Below are positions 13,961 to 49,709 of a stretch of DNA of 64,000 bases, piece after piece. The translations under genes and the position numbers were made by a program. The stretch covers positions 1 through 64,000 of the IMG/VR virus record IMGVR_UViG_3300017917_003822. One strand, 5' to 3'. A model generated the notes under the pieces. The model was not told where the DNA came from and ran no database searches. It was given only the letters and a program-made list of their open reading frames with translations. The number at the start of each line of letters is the position of its first letter. Positions within the stretch are counted from its first letter, which is position 1.

Positions 13961-16900
13961 ATGGCAAATAAGGTAAAAATAGACTACTCACAGTTTAGAG
14001 CATCTGGAGTTTATACGTTAGAATTTGACGCATCACAAAATGTTATTCTAACATCTCAAACTATCAGATTGGTTGTAGGTTTCTCTAATAGGGGGCCTTT
14101 CAACACTCCGGTCTATATCCCAGACGTAACAACTCTTATATCTATTTTTGGTGACATAGACAGATCACTAGAAAATAAAGGATCTTTCTTTCAGAGATCA
14201 ATCTTAACTTGTTTAAATACTGGTCCAGTCTTTGCATTAAATCTATTAAGATTAAATGACGACGAAGAATCTGCTGATCCAGATAGAGTTACGTATCAAT
14301 CATATTCTGTTGATACAGAGGAAGCTAACGGTGTTGTAACAAACAGACTTTATTCCTCGTATTATAACAAGGAAAGATTTTGGTTCGCTGACCCGAACTA
14401 CTTCCTTGCAACATTAAGCGTTGCTGATCAGGGTAAACTTTTCAATTTAACAAACCTTGGAAAATCCCCTATGAGTATAATTGTTAGAAAGTCTACGGAT
14501 TCTTCTAGACCACTCAGAGGTTATGATATTTTCGCAATTGACTGGTATGGCGCTGATAATGTGCCAAGTTTTATGCATCCTTACGACTACATCTCTGATT
14601 ATTTCATAGATGTTATTGCTGTTTTTGGAGATTGGACTAATTATCAGGCTCTTGCAATAGATCCTAAATGGAGCACGTATTTCACGAATAACGGGTTTAT
14701 CAAGAGTAGAATAGATCAATTCTTAGCAGATCCTGACGTTTCTATAGTTACTTCCGTGACCGGATGTATAATTCCAGATTTTGTCGATCTTAATGGAGTC
14801 AATCAGTATATCCAGACTCTTATTAATAACGGAACCCCTTCAACAGGACTATTCTGTGCTATTGACGAACAAGCATTTGATGATATTTGTCAGAATCCTT
14901 CCAAGATAGATTTGGTTGGTAACCATTTAATTGACGAACTATCAGGCGATAGGGACTTAGCTACCCCGAGAATTAACTTCCTAAGTTATGACCAGGTTTT
15001 AGTAGCTGATTATTTATATTCACAAAACGTTGTTGGTGTTACTGGAGCTACTGGATTTAACAGTGCAACCGGAGCAACCGTTTACACTACTGGAGCTAAA
15101 GTTGGTACACTTTTCACATTAACTGGCTCTGCTGGTACAACAGCAGGGGTTGCTTATCAGTCTTTTGAGGCTTATAATCCTAATGCTTATGATGGAGGTT
15201 TACATTATCTTCAAACATCTGGAACTTATGGTACAACTGCTGGTTATATGCAGAATACAGCGGATGTAAATGAGCTTAAAACTTTCCTAAGTGTTACTTC
15301 TTCTGATGATCAGAAATTCATACTAGGTGTGGTTTCTGGATACACCGGAGGATTAACCGGATCTTTAATAAACCAATTTGCTGAAGCTGATATAGTTAAA
15401 CTTAAAGTAACTGGTACTAGAGAGATTGGTGGAGCGCTTAGAATTTTCTTCACCCACCCATTAGATACCTCTTTTTATAGATCTCAGGGTATAACTGTTA
15501 CTCCTACCTACAATTTAACATCTTACAATACTGGTGCTTCCGGAAGTAATCAACCTTTCTATACCGATTCTTATCAATTTGGTAACTCTGACTATCTGGA
15601 TATAACAAGTGTTTCTACACCTAATGGCGTTACTGGTCCAGGTGCTCCTCTTGGAGTTTCCAATGTTATAGTTGCTTATAATGCTTCGGATTTATATCAG
15701 GATAATAAATATTCAGAAATAAATGACGGTGATCTTGCATGGACGGATTCAACAGGAACTCAAGTTAGATACCTAGGATTCGAAGAAACTGTAGATAGAG
15801 ATCAATTCAATCTTGTTTACACTAGGGCTTTCAGTAATGTTGATAGAGATGATGCTACAATCACAAACATACCTGCTTTTGGTACAACCTATGCTTCCGA
15901 TAATATTGGTTATCCGGTAGATGCACAAAACTTTGATATAGTATCACAAGAAGGATCAATTAATCAATTTGTAGATTGTACAAGAATAGATGTTACTACA
16001 TTCACTGTTGGTCTTGATTCGAACGGTAATGTTCCTTTCTCTGTAGGTGATTTGGTAGTTTCGACTGATCTTGATATTTGCGATCCTGCAACAGGAAACA
16101 GACAAAACAGATTGGCTAAAATAACTTCTGTGTCTAGAACAACAACAGCTGGTTTATATAGAGTAGTCTCAGCTAGACCTGTACTTTACTATTCGACCGC
16201 TAATGGAGTTAGAGTTCAGAAATTCCTATCTATTGCTCAATTTACAAGATCATTCGATTTCACTTATCTTTCAGGATTTACCATGACTGATTGGCATAGA
16301 CCTAACGGAAGTGATGCTAGAATATCTGAGATTTTAGATGTTATGTACAATACAAACGTAGCTAAAACATTAGCTTCTAAGGATGTTATTTCCTTCAGAT
16401 ATATTGTAGATACGTTCTCTGGACAGATTTTACCTAATTCTAAATATCAGCTTAGTAGACTTGCTAAATTAAGACAACAAGCACTTGCTATAATAAATGC
16501 ACCTTCGATGGCTCAATTTAGAAGTAGCACTGATCCTAGATTTACTGATGCACCAACAGCATCTAATCCATATCCTAAGTTAAATACAGCTTATATAGCT
16601 GAAGGAGGTAATTTATCTCTTAATCCTTCATACACATTCAGCTTACCTACTGAAGAAGATGGATCTAAATTCTGTGGATTCTATTCACCTTATATTACGG
16701 TTAGAGAATCAAACAGAAATATAGACGTTCCTCCGGCAGCTTACGTTTCTAATAACTTTTTAAGAAAATTTGCTAACGGAGAACCTTATGCAATCATCGC
16801 TGGACAGAAAAGAGGGGTAATAAGCGGATCTAATGTAGTTGGTGTTGAATACGACTTCACCGATGAGGACAGAGGAAATTTAGAACCTTTCGGAATAAAT

Positions 16901-17314
16901 CCTATTATAAAGAGAAGAGGAGTTGGTGTGGTTATATTTGGTAACCAAACTGCTTATCAGCAAGTTAACTCAGCATTCAATCTAGTTCACGTAAGAGACC
17001 TTTTAATTAGTATAGAAAGCGACGTACAGGAGATTTTATCTAATTATCTATTTGATTTCAATGACGACTCGATCAGACTTGAAATTAAAACTCTAGTTGA
17101 TAACTATTTAGATGGTGTAAGAGCAGGAGGTGGTATTTATGCTTACCAGACTATTATGGATGCATCTAACAATACTCCAGCTATTATAGATATGAATATG
17201 GGTATAATCGACGTTATCATCGAACCTGCTAGAGGAATCCAGAAATTCATCAATAGAATCACTGTTACTAGAACAGGTGGAATCGCAGCGGGTGGATTTG
17301 TACAGTTTGTATAA
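13961..17314 (+). CDS. gp18: Tail sheath protein with a large G/T/S-rich insertion
   Basis: SGVYTLEFD, GPFNTPV, PPAAYV, INPI...VIFGNQT, VRDLLI, NNTPAIID. Confidence 0.95.
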   Translation: MANKVKIDYSQFRASGVYTLEFDASQNVILTSQTIRLVVGFSNRGPFNTPVYIPDVTTLISIFGDIDRSLENKGSFFQRSILTCLNTGPVFALNLLRLNDDEESADPDRVTYQSYSVDTEEANGVVTNRLYSSYYNKERFWFADPNYFLATLSVADQGKLFNLTNLGKSPMSIIVRKSTDSSRPLRGYDIFAIDWYGADNVPSFMHPYDYISDYFIDVIAVFGDWTNYQALAIDPKWSTYFTNNGFIKSRIDQFLADPDVSIVTSVTGCIIPDFVDLNGVNQYIQTLINNGTPSTGLFCAIDEQAFDDICQNPSKIDLVGNHLIDELSGDRDLATPRINFLSYDQVLVADYLYSQNVVGVTGATGFNSATGATVYTTGAKVGTLFTLTGSAGTTAGVAYQSFEAYNPNAYDGGLHYLQTSGTYGTTAGYMQNTADVNELKTFLSVTSSDDQKFILGVVSGYTGGLTGSLINQFAEADIVKLKVTGTREIGGALRIFFTHPLDTSFYRSQGITVTPTYNLTSYNTGASGSNQPFYTDSYQFGNSDYLDITSVSTPNGVTGPGAPLGVSNVIVAYNASDLYQDNKYSEINDGDLAWTDSTGTQVRYLGFEETVDRDQFNLVYTRAFSNVDRDDATITNIPAFGTTYASDNIGYPVDAQNFDIVSQEGSINQFVDCTRIDVTTFTVGLDSNGNVPFSVGDLVVSTDLDICDPATGNRQNRLAKITSVSRTTTAGLYRVVSARPVLYYSTANGVRVQKFLSIAQFTRSFDFTYLSGFTMTDWHRPNGSDARISEILDVMYNTNVAKTLASKDVISFRYIVDTFSGQILPNSKYQLSRLAKLRQQALAIINAPSMAQFRSSTDPRFTDAPTASNPYPKLNTAYIAEGGNLSLNPSYTFSLPTEEDGSKFCGFYSPYITVRESNRNIDVPPAAYVSNNFLRKFANGEPYAIIAGQKRGVISGSNVVGVEYDFTDEDRGNLEPFGINPIIKRRGVGVVIFGNQTAYQQVNSAFNLVHVRDLLISIESDVQEILSNYLFDFNDDSIRLEIKTLVDNYLDGVRAGGGIYAYQTIMDASNNTPAIIDMNMGIIDVIIEPARGIQKFINRITVTRTGGIAAGGFVQFV

Positions 17315-17359
17315 TTAATATTAGATGATTTCGGAGATAAAAGATAAATATAACTAACT

Positions 17360-17914
17360 ATGGCAGGACTATCACATTTTCAAAATTCACTTTCAGCTAT
17401 AAACAAATTTGAACCTGTTTATCTGAACCAGTTCGAGGTAACAATTATACCTCCTGCTGCTGTTGCTGGTGGTGAAATATTACTCCAACATGTTAGCAAA
17501 GTTAGTGGACTTTCTTTGGATAAAAATCCTGGTGTTACTAGCCAGAAATATAAGTTCGCTAAAAGGAACTATGCGGGAGCTAAGCCAGAAAACACTTTTA
17601 TGGATGTGAGTATAAGCTTTAGCGTCAATTTAAATGATGCTAATTCGATGTATGTCTTTAAAACATTGAGACAATGGTCTGATTTAATTTACAATCCATT
17701 AACCGGTGCAATGGGTCTTAAAAATGATTATACGGGTACTATTGTTATCTCGATATTTAATAAACAGGGAGATGTTTTTAGAAGAATAACATGTAGAGAT
17801 TGCTTCCCGACAAAACCTATTTCACCAATGAATCTGAACTATACATCTACGGATCTGTATAAAATAGATGATATGACTTGGGCGGTTGATTACTGGGAAG
17901 ATTTATTCCTATAA
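17360..17914 (+). CDS. gp19: Tail tube protein, copy 1 (gp19-like)
   Basis: Follows the sheath gene; NQFEV, RQWSDLIYNP, CFP, DYW. Confidence 0.85.
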   Translation: MAGLSHFQNSLSAINKFEPVYLNQFEVTIIPPAAVAGGEILLQHVSKVSGLSLDKNPGVTSQKYKFAKRNYAGAKPENTFMDVSISFSVNLNDANSMYVFKTLRQWSDLIYNPLTGAMGLKNDYTGTIVISIFNKQGDVFRRITCRDCFPTKPISPMNLNYTSTDLYKIDDMTWAVDYWEDLFL

Positions 17915-17929: not shown

Positions 17930-18505
17930 ATGGCAGGATTACCACATTTTACAAATTCTAGAGCTGCAATAAGCAATTTCGAACCAGTTTATTTAAACCA
18001 ATTTGAGGTTCTAATAAATCCTCCAGCTGGTATAGTTGATGCTTCCACAACCTTTAATGGCGAAGGAATATTAGCTCAGCAAGTTAAATCTATAACAGGA
18101 TTGGCTGTAGATATTGCACCTGCTCAGACTATTAATCAGAATTATAAATTTGCTACCAGACGATATGCTGGTGGTGAGCCTTCTCAGAGTGATATGACTC
18201 TGACCATGGAGTTTGAAGTCAATTTAAACGATGCAAATTCGATGACCGTTTATAAAATTCTTAGACAATGGTCAGATTTAATCTATAATCCACTTACCGG
18301 TGCTATGGGTATAAAATCTGATTATGTTGGTTCTATGTCTATATCTATTTTTAACAAGAGAGGTGACGTTTTCAGAAGAATTAGAATACCTTCGTGTTTT
18401 TTAAGTGAAGCGATAAACCCGATGGAACTTGATTATGAACAAGCAACTATCTATAGCATAACTACAAGCTGGGTGTGTGACTATTGGGAAGATTTATTCC
18501 TATAA
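17930..18505 (+). CDS. gp19: Tail tube protein, copy 2 (gp19-like)
   Basis: Clear paralog of 17360..17914 (FEPVYLNQFEV, RQWSDLIYNPLTGAMG, DYWEDLFL). Confidence 0.85.
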   Translation: MAGLPHFTNSRAAISNFEPVYLNQFEVLINPPAGIVDASTTFNGEGILAQQVKSITGLAVDIAPAQTINQNYKFATRRYAGGEPSQSDMTLTMEFEVNLNDANSMTVYKILRQWSDLIYNPLTGAMGIKSDYVGSMSISIFNKRGDVFRRIRIPSCFLSEAINPMELDYEQATIYSITTSWVCDYWEDLFL

Positions 18506-21427: not shown

Positions 21428-21435
21428 TACATTTG
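21428..21435 (+). promoter_or_regulatory. Bacteroidota-type housekeeping promoter -7 element (TACATTTG)
   Basis: Matches TAnnTTTG; same element at 35230 and 54658, variant at 41715. Confidence 0.65.
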
Positions 21436-21446
21436 TGGATAATCAA

Positions 21447-22037
21447 ATGGAAGAGAGCTTTATGATACAAACCTACGAAGAATACCCAGATCTGTCATTC
21501 ATGACTGACGAATTTATATCCCTTCCGTTCTGGAGAGTTAGAAAAAAAGAAAATGGGACTTTCGAGGTTTCCAGCTTTCCAAAAAAAATTAAAAATTTAA
21601 ATATAGGTATCGAAAATAGAGATACCATATATTTAGAGATGGCATCTGTTTGGTCCAAGAATTCATATTGTAGTCGAATGAAGGTGGGATGTCTTATAGT
21701 TAAGAACAAATCCATCATATCTGACGGATACAATGGTTCTCCAACCGGATTCCCAAATATTTGTGAAAGTGAAGATAATGTAACCTTACCATACGTTCTC
21801 CATGCGGAGGCAAATGCAATCACTAAGTTGGCAAAGGGAACCCAGAGTTCCGATGGATCTACTCTCTATGTAACTCTGTCCCCGTGCTTTGAGTGCTCAA
21901 AACTAATAATACAATCCGGTATAAAAAGAGTTATTTTTTCTGAGGTTTACAGAAAACCTGAATCCCTGTCTTTCCTGGTCGAGGGAGGAGTAGAAATTAT
22001 AAGATTCTCGAATAACCAAGATAAAACCCAAATTTAA
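21447..22037 (+). CDS. dCMP deaminase
   Basis: HAEANAI and SPCFEC zinc motifs, DGYNG. The GTG at 21435 overlaps the promoter, so ATG 21447 or 21462 is preferred. Confidence 0.92.
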   Translation: MEESFMIQTYEEYPDLSFMTDEFISLPFWRVRKKENGTFEVSSFPKKIKNLNIGIENRDTIYLEMASVWSKNSYCSRMKVGCLIVKNKSIISDGYNGSPTGFPNICESEDNVTLPYVLHAEANAITKLAKGTQSSDGSTLYVTLSPCFECSKLIIQSGIKRVIFSEVYRKPESLSFLVEGGVEIIRFSNNQDKTQI

Positions 22038-22040: not shown

Positions 22041-22649
22041 ATGCAACAAAAAGAAAAAAACATTCAGAAGATCGCGGAGGATTTTATCACTCTAAAGAAT
22101 GACAAAAATTTTAAAATTTTATTTGAGAGACTTAGACCAGGTATATTGAACCACTGCTTTCTTATTCTTAAAGAACAGGAACTTGCTGAGGATGCATTCA
22201 TAAATACTATGTCAAAGATATGGTTGAAAATAGACCAGTATAACGATGAGAGAGGAAATTTTTCAACTTGGTGTTATAACATAGCAAGAAATGAATCTTT
22301 GCTTCTAATGAAATCTAGAAAAAGATATCACAGTCACACGGACAGTGAACTTGAATTTCTTTCCTCGCAAAACACAATCGGTGATTCTGTTCAGTATTAT
22401 ACGATAGACGACGACCCAACTTATGCTTTCTACAATGAGGGTTCAGATTTGGATGTGGTGTATGAGTCAGTACTGGATGAAATTAGAGAATTACCCGAAT
22501 TATATAGGGATATTATGATCGATAGGGAAATCAATCATATGAAATATAAGGACATAGCGGAAAAATATGGAATCAAGAAAAGATCCATAGCAACCAGAAT
22601 TCGTAGAGCTAGAGGTAAAATAAGAAAAAAAATAGACGGGAAACAATAA
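22041..22649 (+). CDS. ECF-type sigma-70 factor
   Basis: Region 2 AEDAFINTMSKIW...FSTWCYNIARN; region 4 LPELYR...MKYKDIAEKYGI...TRIRRAR. Confidence 0.9.
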   Translation: MQQKEKNIQKIAEDFITLKNDKNFKILFERLRPGILNHCFLILKEQELAEDAFINTMSKIWLKIDQYNDERGNFSTWCYNIARNESLLLMKSRKRYHSHTDSELEFLSSQNTIGDSVQYYTIDDDPTYAFYNEGSDLDVVYESVLDEIRELPELYRDIMIDREINHMKYKDIAEKYGIKKRSIATRIRRARGKIRKKIDGKQ

Positions 22650-22681: not shown

Positions 22682-23125
22682 ATGCTTAGATTATTTAAAG
22701 TTATAAAAGAGATATCACTTTATCGTGAATATGTCAGAATTATAAAAAAAGAAGAGACAGATTCCCCAATTTGGGCAAGAAGAAATCTTCGTAGGGATTA
22801 TCTTAACCGAATCTATACCGTGGTAAATTTACCCCCTCAGGTACTTTTATCTGTCGATTTACCTAGAGATGCAAGACCTTCGTTCGTTATCAGCGAACTT
22901 AAGCCAACTAATGAATATTTCAAATCACTTAACCTTGAAGAACTCTTAACCATGTGGATAGAGCCTGTTAAAGGGACTGATGAGGAATCATATCTTGCTG
23001 TTTATCAGTTTCTGTTCAGACATCTAAGTTGGTTATGGATTCTAAGATTTTTAATTGAAATCTCCTTAATTACTTTTATTATTATTAAATGGGATTGGGT
23101 TTTAAATCTATTTAACTTAGCATAA
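22682..23125 (+). CDS. Hypothetical protein with C-terminal transmembrane helix
   Basis: Hydrophobic C-terminus WLWILRFLIEISLITFIIIKW. Confidence 0.65.
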   Translation: MLRLFKVIKEISLYREYVRIIKKEETDSPIWARRNLRRDYLNRIYTVVNLPPQVLLSVDLPRDARPSFVISELKPTNEYFKSLNLEELLTMWIEPVKGTDEESYLAVYQFLFRHLSWLWILRFLIEISLITFIIIKWDWVLNLFNLA

Positions 23126-23943
23126 TGAGGCCGGAAATACTAGCTCTCAAGAACGAAATAGAAAAAAAATTAGAATTCTTTACTAATGACAATAAATTCT
23201 CATTTGATGAAGAATCTCATACCTATAGATATGGTGGAATAAAATACGATTCTGTTACCACTTTTCTAAAGACATTTAAGGTACCTTTTGATAGGGAATA
23301 TTGGTCGAAGAGAAAAGCACAGGAAGCTGGAGTTGACGTTTCTATCATACTTAATGAATGGCAGAATAAAGCTAACGTAGCTAATGATCTTGGTACCAGG
23401 GTCCATAAATTCATAGAGGATTTTTGGAGCGGACTAAATCCGGAAATACCTGAATTTGATCCAGACGATGAGTATTCAAAGAGAGTTCATAAATTTATTG
23501 ACCTGTATAAGAGAAAACTTCACGTTTTCGTTCCATTAAAATCTGAACTTAGAATATTTTGTAAAAAGTGGAGACTTGCAGGTACTATAGACCAACCTCT
23601 TCTTTTCTGGGACGAGAAAAGACAGAAAGTTTTTTTAATAATAGGAGACTGGAAAACTAACGGAGATTTTAAGCATGATGATCATCCTAAGGGTAGATAT
23701 AAAAAACTTCTTAGACCATTTTCTCATCTATGGGAAAACCAGCATAACGAGTATTCCATACAAATAAGTCTATATAGATTGATGTTAGAAGAGGAGGTTG
23801 GAATTGAAACAGAGAGTGGATTTCTTTGTCATATAGGACCTGACGAATTACCAAAATTATATCCAGCAAAAGATCTGAGAGAACCCCTAAGAGCCTATTT
23901 GGATCAGAATAGAATTAGTTTTGATATTTTTGATCTTAGATAG
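23125..23943 (+). CDS. PD-(D/E)XK exonuclease
   Basis: FDEESHTY, SVTT, GTRVH, AGTID, IGDWKT, YSIQISLY. Confidence 0.85.
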   Translation: MRPEILALKNEIEKKLEFFTNDNKFSFDEESHTYRYGGIKYDSVTTFLKTFKVPFDREYWSKRKAQEAGVDVSIILNEWQNKANVANDLGTRVHKFIEDFWSGLNPEIPEFDPDDEYSKRVHKFIDLYKRKLHVFVPLKSELRIFCKKWRLAGTIDQPLLFWDEKRQKVFLIIGDWKTNGDFKHDDHPKGRYKKLLRPFSHLWENQHNEYSIQISLYRLMLEEEVGIETESGFLCHIGPDELPKLYPAKDLREPLRAYLDQNRISFDIFDLR

Positions 23944-25581: not shown

Positions 25582-26256
25582 GTGACAGATTCTGAAACAG
25601 TAAACAATGATAATTTTGATGGAGGTACATCGAGTCAGGTGGGAGACATAAACCTGATTGGAGGTAATTCGGAATTTGCAATATCTCCATCAGGAGCTAC
25701 GGCTGGATTTGATATTAAATATAAGAATATAGCCGAAACCATGCCTGATCTGGAGATAATCGAAGCTACTTTTCAGAGGTTCAATGATCCAAATGAGGTT
25801 GAATTTATAAAGGAATCTTTTGAGGTTGTATACCAGGATAAGACATTAGATAAACTGGATGTTGTTGATTTCTTCCATCCTCTCCAAAGTTTTTCTAACT
25901 ATCAAAAACAAACTTTCGTTATTCTTCCTCAAACATCAGCTAATTTGGACCCTTCGTCATTCACGAGTACCAACGGTGAAGTTTCTATGCTGATAGCTAA
26001 AGCGGAATACCTTCCTGGTACCCCCATTGAGGAAAAGATTATTTTTTGGGATTATAAGGGTAATCAGAGAAATATAATGGGAGAAATAATGATTTTAACC
26101 GGTGCAATAAAGGAGAATCTTTCTTGGAAGGGATGGGACGTTGACCCTTTTTCGACATATGGACACACAGGACCTGCTAATTCGGCCAACGGAGGATTTA
26201 TATTCACGAATCCAACAGATTCGGAGGTACAATTAACAGTAATAACAGCAAATTAA
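25582..26256 (+). CDS. Putative structural protein (paralog of 26258..26755)
   Basis: Shares WxYKGN...MGExMxLxG...GW...GGxxFxNP with the next gene. Confidence 0.65.
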   Translation: MTDSETVNNDNFDGGTSSQVGDINLIGGNSEFAISPSGATAGFDIKYKNIAETMPDLEIIEATFQRFNDPNEVEFIKESFEVVYQDKTLDKLDVVDFFHPLQSFSNYQKQTFVILPQTSANLDPSSFTSTNGEVSMLIAKAEYLPGTPIEEKIIFWDYKGNQRNIMGEIMILTGAIKENLSWKGWDVDPFSTYGHTGPANSANGGFIFTNPTDSEVQLTVITAN

Positions 26257-29486: not shown

Positions 29487-29846
29487 ATGACAAAAATTTA
29501 TGTAAAGAATAGCGAGCTCATGGCAGCAGTTATAGAATCAAAGAATGCTGGAAAATTAACACCTGAGACCATAGAGATGTTCAATCTTATGATAGAGGGA
29601 ATATCTAAAAAAATGTCATATAAGGATCCTGAGGATAAAGAGGATTGCATGGCTTTTGCTATGGAGGACTTATGTAAATATTGGAATAGATTCAATCCTG
29701 AAAAATCAAACAATCCGTTTGCGTATTTCACTCAGATTGCAAAGAATGGTTTTGCTAAAGGTTGGAAAAAACTACATCCGCCAAAAAATCCTAAAACTAT
29801 ACCCTTTAGTTATATTACAGGGGAGGATAACTCATATAACGTATAA
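29487..29846 (+). CDS. gp55: Late-transcription sigma factor (T4 gp55-like)
   Basis: YVKNSEL, FNPEKSNNPFAYFTQIAKNGF. Confidence 0.88.
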   Translation: MTKIYVKNSELMAAVIESKNAGKLTPETIEMFNLMIEGISKKMSYKDPEDKEDCMAFAMEDLCKYWNRFNPEKSNNPFAYFTQIAKNGFAKGWKKLHPPKNPKTIPFSYITGEDNSYNV

Positions 29847-32576: not shown

Positions 32577-34202
32577 ATGGCAGGATTTTTAGATTATTTA
32601 AAACCCAATCAATCTGCTCTAGGTAACATATTAAAAAACCTGGGGAACATATCAAAATTTGGTATGCAATATGATGATATGGTTGTGAGAAATTCACAGG
32701 CCATCGGTAAAACTGAGGGTTATTTCTTTAACCAGGAAGGAACAGGATTCACACAAAACGATGCCTTTTATTGGACAGCTTCCTATCAGGATACTAAGGT
32801 AAGAAAATATATTGCATATTTTGACAAGGACTATATAGAAAAAAGAAACTATCTCAGAAAGTTTTCTTTGAACGGAGAAATTGAATTCATATTAGATACT
32901 GTTGCTGATGAATCGATATGTTATGATGACAGGAATTATTTTGCACAACCCTCCTTTATAAATATAGATTTAAAGGATAAAATTAAGGAGGAGATGTCAA
33001 ATCATTATAATAGGCTGTATAATGTTTTTGGATTTCAGAACAGTGTTTTAGGTTGGCAGTATTTTAAACAGTTTTTAATTGACGGATTCTTAGCATTTGA
33101 AATTATTTATGATAACAAGGGAAAGGAAATCATAGGATTTAAAGAGTTGGACCCATCGTCTCTACAGCCCGTTGTTGAGAAAGTTGGCGAGACTGAATAT
33201 AAACAGTTTTGGATACAATATCCAAAAAATCCTCAGATGACTAGGAAACTTACTAACGAGCAGATCATTTATATTTCTTATGCGAAAGGAAATAGTATAT
33301 CGAGAGTAAGCTACATCGAAAGACTTGTTAGATCATATAACATTTTAAGAATCATGGAGAATTCCAGAGTTATCTGGAATGTTATGAATGCTTCATATAG
33401 ACTTAAGTTTATTATACCCATCGGTAGTCAGTCTCCACAGAAGGCTATGCAGACACTTGGCCAATTGATGTCTAATTATAAGGAGGACATTTCGATTAAT
33501 GATGCATCCGGTGAGTTAACAATAAATGGAAGACCAAAAGTTCAGTTTTATAAGAACTACCTATTCCCAGAGAAGGACGGTGTATCACCTCAGATAGAAT
33601 CTTTAAATCCAAGCGGACCTGATTTTAATGTAATGGAGAATGTTCTTTATTTCTTCAATAAGCTTAAAATGGATTCAAAAATTCCTTATGCTAGATTTGC
33701 ATCAAAGAATGGTACACCAGCCAACTATCAGATTTCCATAGATCAATTGGAGCGGGATGAAATTAGATTCGAGAAGTTCCTTAGAAGATTAAGATCCATA
33801 TTTCAGGAAATATTAGTCAAACCCCTTTATATTCAGATGTGCCTAAATCATCCCGAGTTATCTAAGGATAAGAGTTTCAAAGCTAACATAGGACTTAATT
33901 TCTACAGGGATAGTGAATTTGAGGAAATGGTTGAGATGACTGGATACACCAAAAGAAGTGAATTTATTAAAGGTCTGGGTGAGTTAAAAGTTAAATTTGG
34001 AGAAGAAGAAAAACCATACTTTGATAACGACTTTCTTATTCAGAGATTCCTTGGTATGAATCCTGATCAAATTAAAATGAATAAACTCTACAAAGAAAGA
34101 GAGGATAAAGCTGCTGAAAAAGCTAAAGGTGCTGAAGGTGCTGAAGGAGAAACAGAGGGAGCAGCTGAGGGAGAAGAAACAACACCGGAAGTAACGCTAT
34201 AA
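32577..34202 (+). CDS. gp20: Portal protein, copy 2 (T4 gp20-like)
   Basis: Same motifs as copy 1 (SYIERLVRSYNILRIME, IPYARF, RDEIRFEKFLRRLR); full length. Confidence 0.92.
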   Translation: MAGFLDYLKPNQSALGNILKNLGNISKFGMQYDDMVVRNSQAIGKTEGYFFNQEGTGFTQNDAFYWTASYQDTKVRKYIAYFDKDYIEKRNYLRKFSLNGEIEFILDTVADESICYDDRNYFAQPSFINIDLKDKIKEEMSNHYNRLYNVFGFQNSVLGWQYFKQFLIDGFLAFEIIYDNKGKEIIGFKELDPSSLQPVVEKVGETEYKQFWIQYPKNPQMTRKLTNEQIIYISYAKGNSISRVSYIERLVRSYNILRIMENSRVIWNVMNASYRLKFIIPIGSQSPQKAMQTLGQLMSNYKEDISINDASGELTINGRPKVQFYKNYLFPEKDGVSPQIESLNPSGPDFNVMENVLYFFNKLKMDSKIPYARFASKNGTPANYQISIDQLERDEIRFEKFLRRLRSIFQEILVKPLYIQMCLNHPELSKDKSFKANIGLNFYRDSEFEEMVEMTGYTKRSEFIKGLGELKVKFGEEEKPYFDNDFLIQRFLGMNPDQIKMNKLYKEREDKAAEKAKGAEGAEGETEGAAEGEETTPEVTL

Positions 34203-34224: not shown

Positions 34225-35199
34225 ATGAAATTTGATTTTTCAAGATTATTTTCTAAAAGTAAAATACTCGTAATTGGCGATGTTATGCTGGATCATTATG
34301 TTCTTGGTTCAGTTTCGAGAATTTCGCCAGAAGCACCAGTTCCTGTTCTAGTTAGGGAATCTGAGAGTCATTATTTGGGTGGTGCAGGTAACGTTTTTTC
34401 TAATATACATTCTCTAGGTGGGAATGGTGATATAATTTCCGTGATTGGAGACGATTTTAATGGTGAATATATCGAGAAAATGATTTTTGATAAATCCACA
34501 TTAAGTGTTCTTATTAAGGATAAAACAAGAAAAACCACCATAAAATCCAGATACATCGGAAATTCTCATCAATTACTTAGGGTTGATGACGAGGATTGTC
34601 TGGACATTAATCAGGAAATCCAATTACATTTTATGGAGAGACTTAATGCAATCATAGACTTCTACGATTGTGTTATTATGGAAGATTATAATAAGGGACT
34701 TTTAACCCCCGAAATAATAAAAAATGTTGTTAATCTATGTAGATCGAAGGGAAAGAAACTTATAGTTGATCCTAAAATAAGAAACGTTGATTTCTATAAG
34801 GGTTGCTCCGTTCTTAAACCTAATTTTTCGGAATTTTGTATTCTTGCAAATAAGAAGATGAACGTTTCAGATTTTGATTTAATAATAGAGGAGGCCAGAA
34901 AGATTATAAAAAAAATGGATCTCGAGTCTATCTTGGTAACTTTGTCTGATTCTGGAATCCTCTATGTTAGCAAATACGAATCGTACCACAGTCCGGGTTA
35001 TCCAATAAAAGTATCCGATGTTTCCGGAGCTGGCGACACAGTCACCGCTATGTTCTCCCTGTGCTGGTCGTCCGGTGTCGATTTAAAAGAGACTTTGGAT
35101 CTTTGCAATGTAGCAGGATCTATAGCTTGTTCGTTTGTTGGTGCTGTTTCCGTAAACATAGAAGATGTAATTAACAGCGAACATCTAAAAAATCTGTAG
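34225..35199 (+). CDS. rfaE1: D-glycero-D-manno-heptose-7-phosphate kinase (HldE/RfaE domain I, PfkB family)
   Basis: VIGDVMLDHY, RISPEAPVPV, GGAGNV, LLRVD, DYNKG, VDPK, DVSGAGDT. Confidence 0.92.
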   Translation: MKFDFSRLFSKSKILVIGDVMLDHYVLGSVSRISPEAPVPVLVRESESHYLGGAGNVFSNIHSLGGNGDIISVIGDDFNGEYIEKMIFDKSTLSVLIKDKTRKTTIKSRYIGNSHQLLRVDDEDCLDINQEIQLHFMERLNAIIDFYDCVIMEDYNKGLLTPEIIKNVVNLCRSKGKKLIVDPKIRNVDFYKGCSVLKPNFSEFCILANKKMNVSDFDLIIEEARKIIKKMDLESILVTLSDSGILYVSKYESYHSPGYPIKVSDVSGAGDTVTAMFSLCWSSGVDLKETLDLCNVAGSIACSFVGAVSVNIEDVINSEHLKNL

Positions 35200-35256: not shown

Positions 35257-36588
35257 ATGATACAGGAACTAAGATTATTTAAAACCCTCGAGAATCTAAC
35301 TGGTGAAGGTTCTCAAAAATCTAAACAAAATTTAATTGCTGAAAATCTAAATGAAAGATTTTCATATATGTTGGATGTTTGTTACAATCCTTTCATCACC
35401 ACTAAACTCCATAAGATTGCATTTAATGAATCATTGTCAGATAGCAATCCTAATCATTGGGAAGATTTCAAAACACTCATAGAGGAGCTTAAAACAGCTC
35501 CTGCAGCAAACGATTCTCTCCGAAATAGAGCTCAGAATCTTATATCTCAGAAAATTTCGGATGATCCAGCGGAGGATCTTGAGCTTAGAACTGTTCTTAT
35601 GAAGATTTTCACCAAGAGAATGAATATCGGAATCGGTGCCAAATTAATCAATAAAGCTGTTAAAAGGGAGCTAATTCCCGATCCGTCACTTATGTTGGCA
35701 ACTGATGATCACGAGACCATAGAGAAATGGGAAAAAATATACTGCGAGGAAAAGTATGATGGGGTGAGAGTTATTGCTCTTTATAAAAACGGAGAGTTTT
35801 CTTATTTTACCAGGGCTTTCAACGAGCTTGATTCCACATGCTTTCCTAAGATAACTTTTGATCTTAAAACCTGTATGATAAACAGCGGTTTAAAGGGTGA
35901 TTGGTTTTTTGATGGCGAATTGACAGATTTGAATAGAAAATCAGTAAGCGGTAAAGTTACCCAGATATTAAAAGGAAAGGTTGATTCTTCGATAGAGTCA
36001 GGTTTACTTTTTAATGTGTTTGATTTGGAGGAAGCTTCAACACTGGAGAAAGGTTCAGGTATCATTGATTACAAAACGAGGAGAGATACTCTGGAAGTAG
36101 TGCTTAAAAACATAGATGAAAATTCACCGATTAAATTAGCACAAATGTGGGAGCTTGATGATGTTAGTGAGGTTGCTACTATTTATAAAAGATTGGTTGA
36201 CGTTGGCGGCGAAGGCGTTATTTGTAAAGACAATGGAATTTATGAATGCAAGAGATCAAAATCTTGGGTTAAATTTAAGGAGGTGAATGATTGCGATCTT
36301 GAGATAGTTGGTTGGTATCCTGGTGAAGGTAAAAGGGAAGGTTTTATTGGAGGTTTTATTTTAACTGACAGCTCAAAAACACTAAATGTAAGAGTTGGGG
36401 CTGGGTTTACTGATAATGATCTAAAAACTCTAAGTCAGGATCCGGACTCACATATCGGAAAAATAGCAGCTATTCAGTATAACGTAACGATTACCGACAA
36501 GCACGGTAACAGATCTTTGTTTCTTCCTAGATTCATAGAGGTCAGATCTGATAAAAGCTCACCTGATGATTTTTCGGGCAAATTTTAG
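35257..36588 (+). CDS. lig: ATP-dependent DNA ligase
   Basis: EEKYDGVR (KxDG), FDGE, EGVICK, WVKFK, FLPRF. Confidence 0.95.
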   Translation: MIQELRLFKTLENLTGEGSQKSKQNLIAENLNERFSYMLDVCYNPFITTKLHKIAFNESLSDSNPNHWEDFKTLIEELKTAPAANDSLRNRAQNLISQKISDDPAEDLELRTVLMKIFTKRMNIGIGAKLINKAVKRELIPDPSLMLATDDHETIEKWEKIYCEEKYDGVRVIALYKNGEFSYFTRAFNELDSTCFPKITFDLKTCMINSGLKGDWFFDGELTDLNRKSVSGKVTQILKGKVDSSIESGLLFNVFDLEEASTLEKGSGIIDYKTRRDTLEVVLKNIDENSPIKLAQMWELDDVSEVATIYKRLVDVGGEGVICKDNGIYECKRSKSWVKFKEVNDCDLEIVGWYPGEGKREGFIGGFILTDSSKTLNVRVGAGFTDNDLKTLSQDPDSHIGKIAAIQYNVTITDKHGNRSLFLPRFIEVRSDKSSPDDFSGKF

Positions 36589-42505: not shown

Positions 42506-42506
42506 A

Positions 42507-45976: not shown

Positions 45977-45984
45977 GATATATA
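45977..45984 (+). promoter_or_regulatory. Late promoter motif GATATATA (protease-capsid operon)
   Basis: Intergenic exact copy. Confidence 0.78.
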
Positions 45985-46010
45985 AGAAACATAAAAAAGA
46001 AGATATAAAA

Positions 46011-47960: not shown

Positions 47961-47990
47961 AAAATAAAACAAAAAAAAGTAAATAAAATC

Positions 47991-49709
47991 ATGAAATTGA
48001 TTAACGAACAAGAAATCTATGATACCTGGTCTCCGATTATCGAGAGCAAAGCAGGAATCACTGATTCAAGCAAAAAAGAGTGGTTAACTAAATATTGTCA
48101 CTATCACTCATTAAACGAGTCTGCTGGTGCATACCAATCATTAGGAGTTGTAAACGGTATGGGTGCTGTAGCTCCACCTGCTTTCCCTGGTGCTAACATC
48201 GGTGGTAATGCATTCTCAACTGGTGCTAATGCAGGTTTCTATAACCAAACTTGGCAAGGTTCAGGAGATAAATTCCCTTCATTGTTACCTTTAGCTATTC
48301 AGGTAGCTGCTAAAACAATCGGGTTTGATATCGTTCCTGTTATCCCTATGTCAGGTCCAACTGGTATCTTATCTTACTTAGATTATGTATACGCAGGTGG
48401 TAAATTAGCTGGTGCTACTTCAGCTGCTTCTGGAGACAGTTTATCTAAAGCTCCTGCAATGATTAAATTCCCTGTTTACCAAGGATCATCATCTGGTGCT
48501 ACTGGTGCTACAGCTGGAACTTTCACTGTTGGACAATCTTACACAGTAACTAACGCTGGTACATTAACTTTAACTTTCGTTGGACTTTCTAGAATTGATG
48601 GTTTCCCAATCTTCGAAATCACAAACATCACTGATGGTTACAACGTAGCTGCTATCGTAAATGGTACTTCTGTACAAGTTGGTTCTACTGGTATGTATAC
48701 TGGTACTTCAGCTTCATCTAACGGTTACGTTGCTCAGTTAGTTAAAGCTTTAGAAGATCACATCCAAGGATTCTCTGGTGCTGGTTTCAACAACGACGCT
48801 GATTGGCAAGGTCCTTATGTTGATGGTACTAAAACTTACAACCCAATGTTAAGAGGTGTTGGTGAGTCTAACTACTACAACTCAATGGGTCTTTCTACTT
48901 TCACTAAGTTCGTAGAAGCTGACACTTTCCAAGTTGCTGCTTCAGTTACAACTGAGCAAATCCAAGACCTTAACAAACAATTCGGTATCGACGTTATCTC
49001 AATGATCGAGAACGCATTAGTTAATGAGGTTTCACAAGCAATTAACAAGCACATCCTTTCAAGAGCATTTGCTTTAGGTTGGTCTAACCACGTTCAATTC
49101 AACAATGTTGAAAACCAAAACTTGAACTTGAACTTAGTACTTAACGGTTCTGCTGGTACTACTGCATCTTACGTTAACAAGTCTGATGTAAATGTATCTA
49201 TGGCTATCCCTGCAGGTCCTGCATCAACTTCTTTCGAGAACTTATCAACTTTACAAAGAAGATTATTCTCTAGAATCCTTGCAGCTGCAAACGTAGTAGC
49301 TAACAGAGGTAGAAGAGGTCCTGCTAACTTCATCGTAACAAACGCTGCAGTTGCAAGTGCACTTCAAGATATCTCTCAGTTCACTTTCGCTCCATTCTCT
49401 AACACTTTAACTCAAAATAACGGTACTTTATACCCTGTAGGTTCTCTTGCTGGTATGACAGTTTACGTAGATCAGAACATGAACTACTCCGATACTAGAG
49501 TATTAGTTGGTAGAAAAGGTGGTGATGATGAACCAGGTCTTAAATTCATGCCTTACATGATGGCAGAGTCAATTCAGACAATCTCTGAAGGTACAATGTC
49601 ACCTAAGATCGCAGTTAAATCTAGATACGCTCTAGTTGAAGCTGGTATGTTACCTGAAACTATGTACTTAACATTCTATGTTAATGTACCTGCTGGAGGT
49701 TTAGCATAA
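47991..49709 (+). CDS. gp23: Major capsid protein (T4 gp23-like)
   Basis: WSPIIE, VPVIPMSGPTG, RRGPANF, FMPY, PKIAVKSRY; strongly biased codon use. Confidence 0.96.
   Translation: MKLINEQEIYDTWSPIIESKAGITDSSKKEWLTKYCHYHSLNESAGAYQSLGVVNGMGAVAPPAFPGANIGGNAFSTGANAGFYNQTWQGSGDKFPSLLPLAIQVAAKTIGFDIVPVIPMSGPTGILSYLDYVYAGGKLAGATSAASGDSLSKAPAMIKFPVYQGSSSGATGATAGTFTVGQSYTVTNAGTLTLTFVGLSRIDGFPIFEITNITDGYNVAAIVNGTSVQVGSTGMYTGTSASSNGYVAQLVKALEDHIQGFSGAGFNNDADWQGPYVDGTKTYNPMLRGVGESNYYNSMGLSTFTKFVEADTFQVAASVTTEQIQDLNKQFGIDVISMIENALVNEVSQAINKHILSRAFALGWSNHVQFNNVENQNLNLNLVLNGSAGTTASYVNKSDVNVSMAIPAGPASTSFENLSTLQRRLFSRILAAANVVANRGRRGPANFIVTNAAVASALQDISQFTFAPFSNTLTQNNGTLYPVGSLAGMTVYVDQNMNYSDTRVLVGRKGGDDEPGLKFMPYMMAESIQTISEGTMSPKIAVKSRYALVEAGMLPETMYLTFYVNVPAGGLA

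What the first reader, a model, noticed from the sequence alone, without database searches (positions are those of the whole stretch)
15031..49166. Same short Gly/Ala/Thr/Ser motifs in insertions of unrelated virion proteins (possible glycosylation sequon)
Seen: the heptapeptide GSAGTTA occurs in both the tail sheath (15125..15145) and the major capsid protein (49146..49166), with different codons. ATGAT occurs in both (sheath GVTGATG..SATGAT; capsid SSSGATGATAGT), and GATAG occurs in the capsid and in 25582..26256. Inference: these motifs appear to lie outside the conserved cores, and convergent surface loops acting as acceptor sites for the phage glycosyltransferases would mean that the whole particle is glycosylated.
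Basis: partly seen in the sequence, partly recalled or inferred. Interest (0 to 1): 0.62.

Follow-up and report, generated by a model that had tools for sequence, protein, structure and literature searches.

The report
Shared capsid/sheath motif; phage protein heptosyltransferases
The identical seven-residue stretch in the capsid and tail-sheath proteins of this jumbo phage is probably a coincidence within a real family of Gly-x-Thr-Gly loop motifs, but the phage does carry enzymes of protein-glycosylating families, so some virion glycosylation is plausible though not tied to these motifs.

Summary
GSAGTTA is encoded at 15125-15145 (tail sheath) and 49146-49166 (major capsid protein), and the ATGAT and GATAG matches are also real.

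The exact heptapeptide is not special:
- About half of composition-matched shuffles of the window give some unrelated pair sharing a 7-mer.
- Only 2 of 120 homologues in each family carry it.

It does belong to a real motif class. G[AVST]TG occurs 37 times against 6.0 expected in the virion-gene region. It is not enriched in the rest of the genome or in T4. The motifs lie in variable insertions of conserved folds.

Glycosylation gains support from other genes:
- Gene 7532-8734 is a TibC/AAH-type protein O-heptosyltransferase with catalytic residues and iron-finger cysteines intact. A paralogue lies at 169345-171669.
- The phage also encodes GmhA, a heptose-7-phosphate kinase and partner glycosyltransferases.
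- A core GT2+TPR enzyme resembles ThuS/SunS/GmaR.

The link between the motifs and the heptosyltransferase fails. A complete relative lacking the whole heptose system keeps the motifs and the same 4.4-fold enrichment. TibC modifies Ser, and the Ser form of the motif is not enriched.

The parts
13961..17314 (+). Tail sheath gene (1117 aa). The N- and C-terminal cores are conserved. The variable middle insert is aa 347-756 (nt 14999-16228).
   Evidence: phrog_34521 tail sheath, E 3e-121. In 120 homologues, per-30-aa identity is 0.45-0.66 in the middle against 0.8-0.94 at the ends. The AF2 model has pLDDT 80-93 only for 347-756.
15125..15145 (+). GSAGTTA copy in the sheath (aa 389-395).
   Evidence: In the AF2 model it is a coil between beta-bridge residues 389 and 395, at pLDDT 84-90. 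The family consensus at this site is G-V-T-G-A-T-A-G-V. The exact heptapeptide is in 2 of 120 homologues.
15035..15079 (+). Sheath GVTGATGFNSATGAT (aa 359-373), which contains the TGATG and ATGAT motifs.
   Evidence: G-[VIL]-T-G is conserved across the sheath family and in heptosyltransferase-less relative G003.
47991..49709 (+). Major capsid protein gene (572 aa, T4 gp23 type). Variable regions are aa 60-90, aa 138-250 (nt 48402-48740) and aa 380-415 (nt 49128-49235).
   Evidence: PF07068 and phrog_138. The PDB profile match to T4 gp23 aligns the conserved blocks on either side of 138-250. Conservation profile.
49146..49166 (+). GSAGTTA copy in the MCP (aa 386-392).
   Evidence: The family pattern is G-x-x-G-T-T-[SA]-x-Y. 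GTT is kept in 113 of 120 homologues and the exact heptapeptide in 2 of 120. The whole loop is absent in relative L066.
48495..48518 (+). MCP GATGATAG (aa 169-176). The first 18 nt are a 9-nt tandem duplication, GGTGCTACT then GGTGCTACA.
   Evidence: codons. GATAG is kept in 95 of 120 homologues. Some relatives have three GAT units. The segment is coil between strands in the insertion-domain part of the model, at pLDDT 65-80.
25693..25707 (+). GATAG in ORF 25582-26256 (aa 38-42). The protein has unknown function.
   Evidence: No PHROG or Pfam match. Homologues have SGDTAS (G001) and NGATGS (G003) at this site.
7532..8734 (+). BAHT-family protein O-heptosyltransferase (TibC/AAH type, 400 aa).
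   Evidence: PDB TibC 4RAP, E 9.5e-51, over residues 59-380 against 48-376. TIGR04414 scores 255 bits against a cut-off of 200. Asp110, Lys230 and Cys339/342/358/370 equivalents are present, and the beta-hairpin thumb is shortened by 9 residues.
6576..7541 (+). GT1/GT4-type glycosyltransferase overlapping the heptosyltransferase start; probable glycan-extending partner.
   Evidence: PF00534, E 3.5e-9. It is lost together with the heptosyltransferase in G003. A paralogous GT1+FkbM gene precedes the second heptosyltransferase.
4400..5605 (+). Possible GT-A-type glycosyltransferase (weak).
   Evidence: PF00535 partial match, E 1.5e-3. A VDDDT motif is visible. No Pfam or NCBIfam hit passes threshold. 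It is absent from G001.
3807..4394 (+). 2OG-Fe(II) oxygenase of the prolyl-hydroxylase-like family.
   Evidence: PF13640, E 1.6e-13. Its role is unknown. It is not conserved in G001 or G003.
34225..35199 (+). [quoted passage not shown]
   Evidence: TIGR02198 scores 315 bits, just under the cut-off of 345. PF00294, E 8e-30. It co-occurs with the heptosyltransferase: present in G001 and absent in G003, G004 and G005.
5855..5862 (+). Promoter-like GATATATA motif heading the unit 5883-6206, GT1, heptosyltransferase. The same motif precedes neck (8749), sheath (13924), the portal unit (30910) and the protease-MCP unit (45977).
   Evidence: 15 matches in the window, all on the + strand, against 5.9 expected. 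Genome-wide there are 40 on + and 8 on -, mostly 12-37 nt upstream of starts.

Best explanation
The window is the start of a 270.6-kb jumbo phage related to Lak phages and 'moraphages', whose hosts are predicted to be Bacteroidota.

The identical GSAGTTA in sheath and capsid protein is a coincidence between two instances of a wider, lineage-specific class of short Gly-x-Thr-Gly and Gly-[AST]-Thr-[AS]-Gly segments. These segments populate the variable, loop-rich insertions that decorate the conserved folds of virion proteins:
- the MCP region between the blocks that align to T4 gp23;
- a second MCP loop after the long helix;
- the 410-residue middle insert of the sheath;
- the large fibre-like proteins.

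The segments are inherited within each protein family. Some arise by tandem duplication of a 9-nt GGT-GCT-ACT unit. They are Thr-specific. They are kept with equal enrichment in relatives that have no heptosyltransferase. I therefore read them as turn- or loop-forming elements of exposed insertions, not as the heptosyltransferase's sequon (inferred).

Separately, the phage very probably glycosylates some late proteins. It encodes the following:
- two TibC/AAH-type protein O-heptosyltransferases;
- GmhA and a heptose-7-phosphate kinase, for the donor ADP-D,D-heptose;
- GT1, GT1+FkbM-methyltransferase and GT2 partners.

All of these were gained or lost as one unit, and all lie in units headed by the same promoter-like motif as the structural genes. 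The phage also has a clade-wide GT2+TPR enzyme that resembles peptide and flagellin glycosyltransferases.

What is shown: the sequence motifs, their statistics and conservation, the enzyme family assignments and the phyletic patterns. What is inferred: late expression, protein (virion) targets and surface exposure. No acceptor site is identified.
For: Coincidence:
- In the window, 0.72 unrelated pairs are expected to share a 7-mer, with P(at least one) = 0.5.
- The exact heptapeptide is in 2 of 120 MCPs and 2 of 120 sheaths.
- The chance that random members of the two families are identical at these sites is about 4e-4.

The motif class is real:
- G[AVST]TG occurs 42 times against 9.7 expected genome-wide.
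- It occurs 37 times against 6.0 expected in the 8.8-123 kb region, and 5 against 3.1 in the rest of the genome.
- T4 structural genes give 4 against 2.9.
- The Ser form G[AVST]SG has a ratio of about 1 in four of the five genomes and 1.5 in G004.
- Thr recurs at positions -1, +2 and +5, a period of three.
- Codons differ between copies, so the signal is at the protein level.

Location:
- The motifs sit in variable regions.
- They are coil or hairpin in the confident model parts.

Independence from the heptosyltransferase:
- Complete relative G003 (430 kb) lacks both heptosyltransferases, both GT1 genes, GmhA, the kinase and one GT2.
- G003 still keeps the sheath, MCP and ORF-25582 motifs and a 4.4-fold enrichment, 53 against 12.2.
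- MCP variable-region Ser and Thr content is equal with and without the enzyme.

Glycosylation machinery:
- GT2+TPR best matches ThuS (6.7e-7), GmaR (2e-6) and SunS. It is present in 16 of 17 related records and 10 of 10 complete ones.
- The promoter-like motif is shared with structural genes.
Against: - No direct evidence of any modification.
- The MCP model is poor overall (pLDDT 52) and the sheath core is unmodelled, so outward orientation rests on analogy with T4 gp23 and gp18.
- A structural role for GxTG is a default reading. No known fold or motif explains it (Foldseek and VIA found nothing with Z of 5 or more).
- The enrichment tracks the clade-wide GT2+TPR gene: 4.3-4.6-fold where it is 72-83% identical, 2.7-fold where it is 33% identical, 2.1-fold in the one record without it, and none in T4. 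A sequon for that enzyme is therefore not excluded. That comparison has six genomes and is confounded by phylogeny.
- GmhB was not found. The adenylyltransferase candidate is weak and absent from G001, so the phage-encoded heptose pathway is incomplete.
Confidence: 0.55

Rival explanations
1. The Gly/Ala/Thr/Ser motifs are convergent acceptor sites (a sequon) for phage glycosyltransferases, and capsid, sheath and fibres are all glycosylated. After this analysis the most plausible enzyme would be the clade-wide GT2+TPR protein, with the heptosyltransferase system as an accessory second layer.
For: - The motif class is enriched 6-fold, only in the virion-gene region, and is absent in T4.
- The motifs lie in variable loops.
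- Identical short motifs occur in proteins with no detectable domain homology.
- The GT2+TPR enzyme resembles ThuS/SunS/GmaR and is core to the clade.
- Enrichment is highest in genomes with a close GT2+TPR copy.
- A TibC-type protein heptosyltransferase is present.
Against: - The motifs are independent of the heptosyltransferase system.
- The exact heptapeptide is not conserved.
- Strict Thr specificity, and conserved flanking Gly residues, are also what a structural turn would show.
- The GT2+TPR similarity is modest (E about 1e-6), and its substrate is unknown.
- No modification data exist.
Confidence: 0.25
2. Pure composition and chance. Virion proteins are simply rich in G, A, S and T, so short shared strings have no meaning at all, including the motif class.
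For: - The G+A+S+T fraction is 0.38 in the MCP and 0.32 in the sheath, against 0.25 genome-wide.
- A shared 7-mer somewhere in the window is expected half the time.
Against: - Shuffles that keep local composition in 12-aa blocks still give only 9.7 G[AVST]TG against 42 observed, and 1.1-1.2 G[AST]T[AS]G against 12 observed.
- The Ser analogue and GTT are not enriched.
- T4 shows no enrichment.
- The motifs are conserved at fixed alignment positions.
Confidence: 0.07
3. The heptose genes and glycosyltransferases do not act on virion proteins. They act on phage DNA (heptosylated hydroxymethyl-pyrimidines) or on host envelope glycans.
For: - Phage glycosyltransferases that put heptose on 5hmC are documented (bioRxiv 10.1101/2023.12.21.572611).
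- The genome has a thymidylate-synthase-family gene, a weak second copy, and a dCMP deaminase.
Against: - The enzymes match TibC/AAH at equivalog level, including the substrate-binding iron finger, and do not match T4 beta-GT-like DNA glycosyltransferases.
- No Tet/JBP domain was found, although that search had no positive control.
- The genes sit in units headed by the same promoter-like motif as the structural genes.
- In Microcystis phage Mel-JY01 the homologous domain lies next to an annotated structural protein.
Confidence: 0.1
4. The shared motifs mark one mobile decoration domain inserted into several virion proteins, so they reflect homology and not convergence.
For: - The motif GxTGATAG recurs in the MCP, in the sheath family consensus and in the 96-aa ORF 265269-265559.
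Against: - hhalign of the MCP insertion against the sheath insertion gives probability 0.8%.
- ORF 265269 against the MCP insertion gives 7%, and against the sheath 1.2%. All alignments cover only the 8-13 motif residues.
Confidence: 0.03

Closest known systems
Bacterial autotransporter heptosyltransferases (BAHT: TibC, AAH), which modify TibA, AIDA-I and Ag43
   Same: The gene 7532-8734 product aligns over TibC residues 48-376 (E 9.5e-51) and passes NCBIfam TIGR04414. Catalytic Asp, Lys230 and the four iron-finger Cys are present. These are cytoplasmic enzymes that use ADP-D,D-heptose (PMC4358343). The phage supplies GmhA and a heptose-7-P kinase.
   Different: The enzyme is encoded by a lytic-type jumbo phage next to virion genes, not next to an autotransporter. 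The beta-hairpin thumb needed for the TibC dodecamer is shortened. The second copy is fused to a GT4-like N-terminal domain. The substrate is unknown. TibC acts on Ser in beta-helix repeats, and no such substrate was recognised here.
Virion glycosylation in mycobacteriophages (Freeman et al. 2023, as summarised in PMC12619734)
   Same: Phage-encoded glycosyltransferases are proposed or shown to decorate abundant virion proteins such as capsid and tail tube.
   Different: In those phages the glycans sit at the C-termini of capsid and tail-tube subunits, according to PMC12619734. Here the candidate sites are internal loops, the enzymes belong to other families (BAHT, GT2+TPR), and nothing has been shown experimentally. 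I could not read the original paper.
GT2+TPR peptide/protein glycosyltransferases (ThuS, SunS; Listeria GmaR)
   Same: Gene 140013-141293 has an N-terminal GT2 domain followed by TPR-like repeats. Its best solved-structure matches are ThuS 7MSK, GmaR and SunS.
   Different: Similarity is modest (E 7e-7 to 2.5e-4). No glycocin-like peptide or flagellin is present, and the target is unknown.
T4 gp23 insertion domain and outward sheath domains of T4 gp18
   Same: Lineage-specific insertions are carried on conserved HK97-like and sheath cores. The MCP conserved blocks align to gp23 on both sides of the variable region. The sheath C-terminal core matches sheath families.
   Different: The insertions are larger (410 aa in the sheath) and unrelated in sequence. 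They have no fold match with Z of 5 or more. Their outward orientation is inferred from my knowledge of the T4 structures and was not computed here.
Collagen-like Gly-X-Thr repeat glycoproteins (for example Bacillus BclA; from my own knowledge, not checked here)
   Same: Thr recurs with a period of three around the motif, as G-x-T-G-x-T. Bona fide collagen-like proteins are present in the genome.
   Different: The MCP and sheath motifs are only 2-3 triplets long and sit in globular beta-rich domains, not in a triple helix. Collagen-like proteins do not co-occur with the heptosyltransferase: none in G001 (which has it), four in G003 (which lacks it).

Membership tests
BAHT (TibC/AAH autotransporter strand-loop-strand O-heptosyltransferase) | Sequence membership: NCBIfam TIGR04414 score above the curated cut-off (200 bits) | tested here: met
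   7532-8734 scores 255.2 bits. 169345-171669 scores 199.9 bits, at the cut-off. TibC 4RAP gives E 9.5e-51 and 6.3e-36.
BAHT (TibC/AAH autotransporter strand-loop-strand O-heptosyltransferase) | Catalytic Asp110 (D110A is inactive) and Lys230 | tested here: met
   SLGD aligns with TibC LGD(110), and GAKYW aligns with QAK(230)YW, in 7532-8734. The paralogue has AQAKHW aligned with good confidence. Its SLGDN rests on a weak alignment segment. Residue roles are from PMC4358343.
BAHT (TibC/AAH autotransporter strand-loop-strand O-heptosyltransferase) | Iron-finger: four Cys (339, 342, 358, 370) | tested here: met
   C-H-G-C ... W-C-P ... E-C-T in 7532-8734 and C-N-S-C ... W-C-P ... E-C-T in the paralogue. 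All four are aligned to the TibC cysteines.
BAHT (TibC/AAH autotransporter strand-loop-strand O-heptosyltransferase) | Beta-hairpin thumb (Phe265/Val266) mediating the dodecamer ring | tested here: not met
   A 9-residue gap replaces the thumb in 7532-8734. In the paralogue the length is kept, but Gly and His replace Phe and Val. The oligomeric state may therefore differ. This is an assembly feature and not a catalytic one.
BAHT (TibC/AAH autotransporter strand-loop-strand O-heptosyltransferase) | [quoted passage not shown] | not testable with these tools
   Indirect only. The phage GmhA and heptose-7-P kinase co-occur with the enzyme. No autotransporter-like substrate was recognised.
   The exact GSAGTTA is in 2 of 120 homologues in each family, and Ser387 varies (S/A/G/T/N/L). 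The G-x-T-G, GTT and GATAG cores are conserved in 90-113 of 120.
   For the heptosyltransferase, G003 and the L027 record (both complete, both lacking it) keep the motifs. G003, the one tested genome-wide, has 4.4-fold enrichment against 4.3-4.6-fold in genomes that have it. For the core GT2+TPR gene the test is uninformative, because nearly all relatives have it.
   The motifs are in coil or hairpin segments of variable insertions. Particle-level orientation could not be computed. The MCP model has pLDDT 52 and the sheath core is unmodelled.
   Needs glycopeptide mass spectrometry of virions or of co-expressed proteins.
T4 gp23-type major capsid protein | Pfam PF07068 / PHROG major head protein match and alignment to solved gp23 | tested here: met
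   PF07068 is precomputed for the protein and all 120 homologues. phrog_138 gives E 1.2e-35. The profile matches T4 gp23 6UZC at E 2.5e-8 in three collinear blocks.
GT2+TPR protein glycosyltransferases (ThuS/SunS/GmaR-like) | GT2 catalytic domain followed by TPR repeats, with closest solved relatives being protein or peptide glycosyltransferases | tested here: inconclusive
   PF00535 matches aa 41-131. Best PDB hits are ThuS 7MSK at 6.7e-7, GmaR at 2.1e-6 and SunS at 1.4e-4. Designed TPR proteins match aa 219-336. The scores are modest, and catalytic residues were not checked.

The most novel reading that the evidence does not exclude
Virions of this clade of Bacteroidota jumbo phages are coated with phage-built glycans in two layers. 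First, a clade-wide GT2+TPR enzyme O-glycosylates Thr in the Gly-x-Thr-Gly loops of capsid, sheath and fibre insertions, so that the enriched motif is a viral O-glycosylation sequon. Second, an accessory, horizontally mobile module adds methylated heptose-based glycans to Ser in strand-loop-strand sites. That module comprises two TibC-type O-heptosyltransferases, GmhA, a heptose kinase, and GT1/FkbM partners. This would be the first phage use of the autotransporter heptosylation machinery.
Probability: 0.12. Interest if true: 0.85.

Novelty: new variant of a known kind. Interest (0 to 1): 0.6.

Why it matters
Virion glycosylation is established for only a few phages, the mycobacteriophages being the documented case cited here. 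It affects immune recognition and possibly receptor binding, stability and defence evasion.

TibC/AAH-type protein O-heptosyltransferases are known only from bacteria, where they modify autotransporter adhesins. Finding them in an abundant aquatic jumbo-phage lineage, together with phage-encoded steps of ADP-heptose synthesis, extends this machinery to viruses. I found homologues in only 4 of 50,697 deposited phage genomes. The one that lies in an annotated record is labelled 'methyltransferase FkbM'. No paper in the searchable library describes them.

The idea is directly testable, because E. coli already makes ADP-heptose. Co-expressing the phage enzyme with candidate virion domains should give +192 Da steps.

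The Thr-specific GxTG enrichment in virion proteins (6-fold, and absent from T4) is an unexplained sequence signature. It is either a new viral sequon or a new structural motif of decoration domains.

For the scan itself, the case shows that an eye-catching identical heptapeptide can be chance while the hypothesis it prompted still points at real biology.

Tried and rejected
- **Shared mobile domain.** hhalign of the MCP insertion, the sheath insertion, ORF 265269 and ORF 25582 gave alignments limited to the motif, with probability 0.2-7%. Rejected.
- **DNA-level element.** Codons differ among the 12 G[AST]T[AS]G copies. Rejected, apart from the local 9-nt duplication in the MCP.
- **T4-type late promoter TATAAATA.** 12 matches against 11.2 expected. 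Not used; GATATATA was found instead.
- **Structure mapping.** The AF2 model of the MCP with a 37-sequence alignment was poor (pLDDT 52). The sheath model was good only for aa 347-756. Foldseek against PDB gave no hit at E of 0.001 or below. VIA wide search gave a best Z of 4.9. Particle-level exposure could therefore not be computed.
- **GmhB phosphatase (TIGR01656).** Not found. The adenylyltransferase candidate 181015-181458 is weak (56 bits against a cut-off of 181) and is absent from G001, which has the heptosyltransferase.
- **The 686-aa cytidylyltransferase-like protein.** It is present in all relatives, so it is not specific to the heptose system.
- **Tet/JBP domain.** No match, but the control genomes gave none either.
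- **Ser/Thr content of MCP variable regions against heptosyltransferase presence.** No difference: S 0.094 against 0.092, and T 0.125 against 0.124.
- **Collagen-like proteins as the obligate heptosyltransferase substrate.** They do not co-occur: none in G001, four in G003.
- **Genes co-occurring with the heptosyltransferase.** I screened the 38 genes present only in genomes that have it. No obvious substrate or further sugar enzyme emerged; hits included Hsp70, an amidase, a Shedu-like protein and a GIY-YIG protein.
- **Pfam on the large fibre proteins.** This gave almost nothing that explains GxTG.

Full report
**Context**

The window is the first 64 kb of a single 270,629-bp viral contig (GC 36%, CheckV completeness 99%).

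- Its major capsid protein (MCP, 47991-49709) is a T4 gp23-type protein (PF07068, phrog_138).
- The MCP is 46% identical to an uncultured megaphage, 39-40% to Prevotella Lak phages and 30-34% to Tenacibaculum and Flavobacterium jumbo phages.
- The genome also encodes an Hsp70.
- It therefore resembles the recently described freshwater 'moraphages', which have predicted Flavobacteriia hosts and four core glycosyltransferase gene families (PMC12619734).
- Gene 13961-17314 is the tail sheath (phrog_34521, E 3e-121).
- ORF 25582-26256 matches no PHROG or Pfam family.

**The observation**

The two GSAGTTA copies share 18 of 21 bases, and 4 of 7 codons are identical.

- For this particular pair, a shared 7-mer has P of 0.003-0.005 under composition-matched shuffles.
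Among the window's 67 proteins, 0.72 unrelated pairs are expected to share a 7-mer, with P(at least one) = 0.50.
- Genome-wide, 10-14 such pairs are expected and 26 are seen.
- Among 120 homologues of each protein (82-95% identical MCPs, 65-99% identical sheaths), the exact heptapeptide occurs in only two of each.

The identity itself is best read as coincidence.

**What lies behind it**

The family alignments show that both sites belong to one pattern.

- At the MCP site the family reads G-x-x-G-T-T-[SA]-x-Y.
- At the sheath site the commonest form is G-V-T-G-A-T-A-G-V.
- That form is nearly the same as the other MCP motif, G-x-T-G-A-T-A-G-T-F, which 95 of 120 MCPs keep.

Tested against shuffles that preserve composition within 12-residue blocks, the results are as follows.

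| Motif and sequence set | Observed | Expected |
|---|---|---|
| G[AVST]TG, whole genome | 42 | 9.7 |
| G[AST]T[AS]G, whole genome | 12 | 1.1-1.2 |
| GTT, whole genome | 30 | 27 |
| G[AVST]SG (Ser analogue), whole genome | 10 | 10.6 |
| G[AVST]TG, 8.8-123 kb region | 37 | 6.0 |
| G[AVST]TG, rest of the genome | 5 | 3.1 |
| G[AVST]TG, 63 kb of T4 structural genes | 4 | 2.9 |

- The 8.8-123 kb region holds the virion genes identified here and the large fibre-like proteins.
- Around the motif, Thr recurs at -1, +2 and +5, which indicates short G-x-T triplet runs.
- In the MCP, GATGAT is a 9-nt tandem duplication, GGTGCTACT then GGTGCTACA. Some relatives carry three units.
- Codons differ among copies, so the signal is at the protein level.
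- Profile-profile comparison finds no homology between the MCP and sheath insertions beyond the motif.

**Where the motifs sit**

- MCP conservation drops in aa 60-90, 138-250 and 380-415.
- A profile search aligns the flanking conserved blocks to T4 gp23. On that basis aa 138-250 sits where I recall the gp23 insertion domain to be; its coordinates were not checked here.
- The sheath has conserved ends and a variable middle, aa 347-756.
- AlphaFold models were poor overall (pLDDT about 52) but locally usable.
- The sheath middle has pLDDT 80-93, with GSAGTTA as a loop between two bridge residues.
- The MCP insertion region has pLDDT 65-80, with SSSGATGATAG as coil between strands.
- Fold searches gave no informative match.

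Outward exposure is inferred by analogy with T4 gp23 and gp18 and was not computed.

**Glycosyltransferases**

The 'heptosyltransferase' is not an LPS enzyme.

- Gene 7532-8734 matches TibC (PDB 4RAP) at E 9.5e-51. It scores 255 bits on NCBIfam TIGR04414, 'autotransporter strand-loop-strand O-heptosyltransferase', against a cut-off of 200.
- The catalytic Asp110, Lys230 and all four iron-finger cysteines are aligned and conserved. The beta-hairpin thumb that builds the TibC dodecamer is shortened by 9 residues.
- A paralogue at 169345-171669 scores 199.9 bits and is fused to a GT4-like domain.
- Each copy is preceded by a GT1 gene. The second GT1 carries an FkbM methyltransferase domain.
- The phage also encodes GmhA (113718-114320, 234 bits) and a heptose-7-phosphate kinase (34225-35199, 315 bits). 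Both score just under their equivalog cut-offs.
- There is a weak adenylyltransferase candidate. GmhB was not found.
- TibC uses ADP-D,D-heptose and modifies Ser, not Thr. Its mapped sites lie in SASKVIQNSGGAVITNTSAAVSGTN (PMC4358343).
- A further gene, 140013-141293, combines a GT2 domain with TPR repeats. Its best solved relatives are the peptide and protein glycosyltransferases ThuS, GmaR and SunS.
- That GT2+TPR gene is present in 16 of 17 related records and in all 10 complete ones.
- An over-represented motif, GATATATA[GA], lies 12-37 nt upstream of many genes, including neck and sheath. It also heads the portal unit, several fibre-like genes and the units containing the glycosyltransferase, GmhA and kinase genes.
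- The motif occurs 40 times on the + strand and 8 times on the - strand. In the window there are 15 matches against 5.9 expected.
- This suggests co-expression with virion genes (inference).

**Testing the link**

- TIGR04414 homologues occur in 17 of 27 related viral records. Among complete genomes they are absent only from a roughly 430-kb subclade.
- One such genome, G003 (complete, with terminal repeats), lacks both heptosyltransferases, both GT1 genes, GmhA, the kinase and one GT2. The system therefore behaves as one gain/loss unit.
- G003 nevertheless keeps VVGITGATGF and ITGATAGV in its sheath, GATGATGATAASF in its MCP and NGATGSF in the ORF-25582 homologue.
- G003 shows the same enrichment, 53 against 12.2, or 4.4-fold. 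Two genomes with the heptosyltransferase show 4.3- and 4.6-fold.
- More distant genomes without it show 2.7- and 2.1-fold.
- Ser and Thr content of the MCP variable regions is the same with and without the enzyme.

The motifs are therefore not tied to the heptosyltransferase. They could still be acceptor sites for the clade-wide GT2+TPR enzyme. Enrichment roughly follows that gene, but the comparison has only six genomes and is confounded by phylogeny.

**Conclusion**

| Claim | My probability |
|---|---|
| The exact GSAGTTA is a specific sequon | about 0.05 |
| The GxTG-class motifs are acceptor sites | about 0.25 |
| Some late or virion proteins of this phage carry phage-made glycans | about 0.6 |

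- The best-supported reading is that GSAGTTA is a coincidence within a real, Thr-specific, lineage-wide motif class of exposed variable loops.
- The function of that motif class is unresolved and is most simply structural.
- The heptosylation module is an accessory system whose targets are unknown.
- DNA heptosylation, known for other phage glycosyltransferases, is a minor rival, because these enzymes are equivalog-level TibC/AAH relatives.

**Novelty**

- Homologues of the phage heptosyltransferase occur in only 4 of 50,697 deposited phage genomes. The one that lies in an annotated record is labelled 'methyltransferase FkbM'.
- Literature searches found no description of such enzymes in phages.
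- Neither reads tool (look-up of sequencing runs, read laying) was used. No sequence in the window was taken for human.

Noticed in passing
window 30977-32572 and 32577-34202: Two adjacent paralogous portal-protein genes. Both match phrog_213 (E 2e-55 and 4e-65) and they share many 7- and 8-mers.
   Followed up: no
window 17360-17914 and 17930-18505: Two adjacent paralogous tail-tube genes (phrog_32623 and tail-tube PHROGs).
   Followed up: no
window 5855, 8749, 13924, 24588, 26809, 30910, 39685, 42480, 43258, 45977, 49771, 56738, 58594 (+ strand), and 25 more sites in the rest of the genome: Promoter-like motif GATATATA[GA], mostly 12-37 nt upstream of start codons of structural and other genes. 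There are 40 on the + strand and 8 on the - strand; in the window 15 against 5.9 expected. The T4 late-promoter motif TATAAATA is not enriched. The phage encodes a gp55-like late sigma factor (29487-29846).
   Followed up: partly
G000:C1 124021-126984 (L092:21-2984): A 987-aa collagen-like protein made of (G-S-S-G-T-S)n triplets (30% Ser; Pfam Collagen E 2.6e-92) with a C-terminal Peptidase_S74 chaperone domain. A prolyl-hydroxylase-like 2OG-Fe(II) oxygenase lies at window 3807-4394. Shorter collagen-like stretches occur in 104482-106167 and 106169-108343.
   Followed up: partly
G000:C1 140013-141293 (L092:16013-17293): Clade-wide core GT2+TPR gene, 72-83% identical in all but one of the close relatives searched (61% in G020). 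Its best solved-structure matches are the peptide and protein glycosyltransferases ThuS, GmaR and SunS.
   Followed up: partly
G000:C1 178333-179229: A 298-aa paralogue of the MCP that shares the 8-mer RRGPANFI. It lies next to a thymidylate-synthase-family gene (177099-178319). It may be a vertex protein or a remnant.
   Followed up: no
G000:C1 76998-81917, 81961-82575, 188076-189212, 193262-194233 (-): Long poly-Thr and Thr/Ser linkers (TTTTTTTT, STTTIAPTTTT) shared among four otherwise different proteins.
   Followed up: no
G000:C1 265269-265559 (L099:1269-1559): A 96-aa ORF with its own GATATATA motif upstream. It shares the 8-mer GATGATAG with the MCP. Among the four relatives compared it has a homologue only in G001, which has the heptosyltransferase (77% identity), and none in G003, G004 or G005. 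No family match.
   Followed up: partly
L171 (Microcystis phage Mel-JY01, PP395634.1 4750-8430): A TibC-like domain forms the C-terminal part of a 1226-aa protein annotated 'methyltransferase FkbM'. It lies next to an annotated structural protein and near a 639-aa 'cytidylyltransferase like protein'. The same enzyme combination therefore recurs in a phage with a different (cyanobacterial) host.
   Followed up: partly
window 21435-22037, 22041-22649, 23125-23943, 35257-36588: dCMP deaminase, a sigma-factor-like protein, an exonuclease and an ATP-dependent DNA ligase are interleaved with structural genes, so the window is not a pure structural module.
   Followed up: no
G000:C1 128664-130553: Full-length Hsp70/DnaK gene (PF00012, E 3e-259). 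Among the four relatives compared it is present in G001 and absent from G003, G004 and G005.
   Followed up: no
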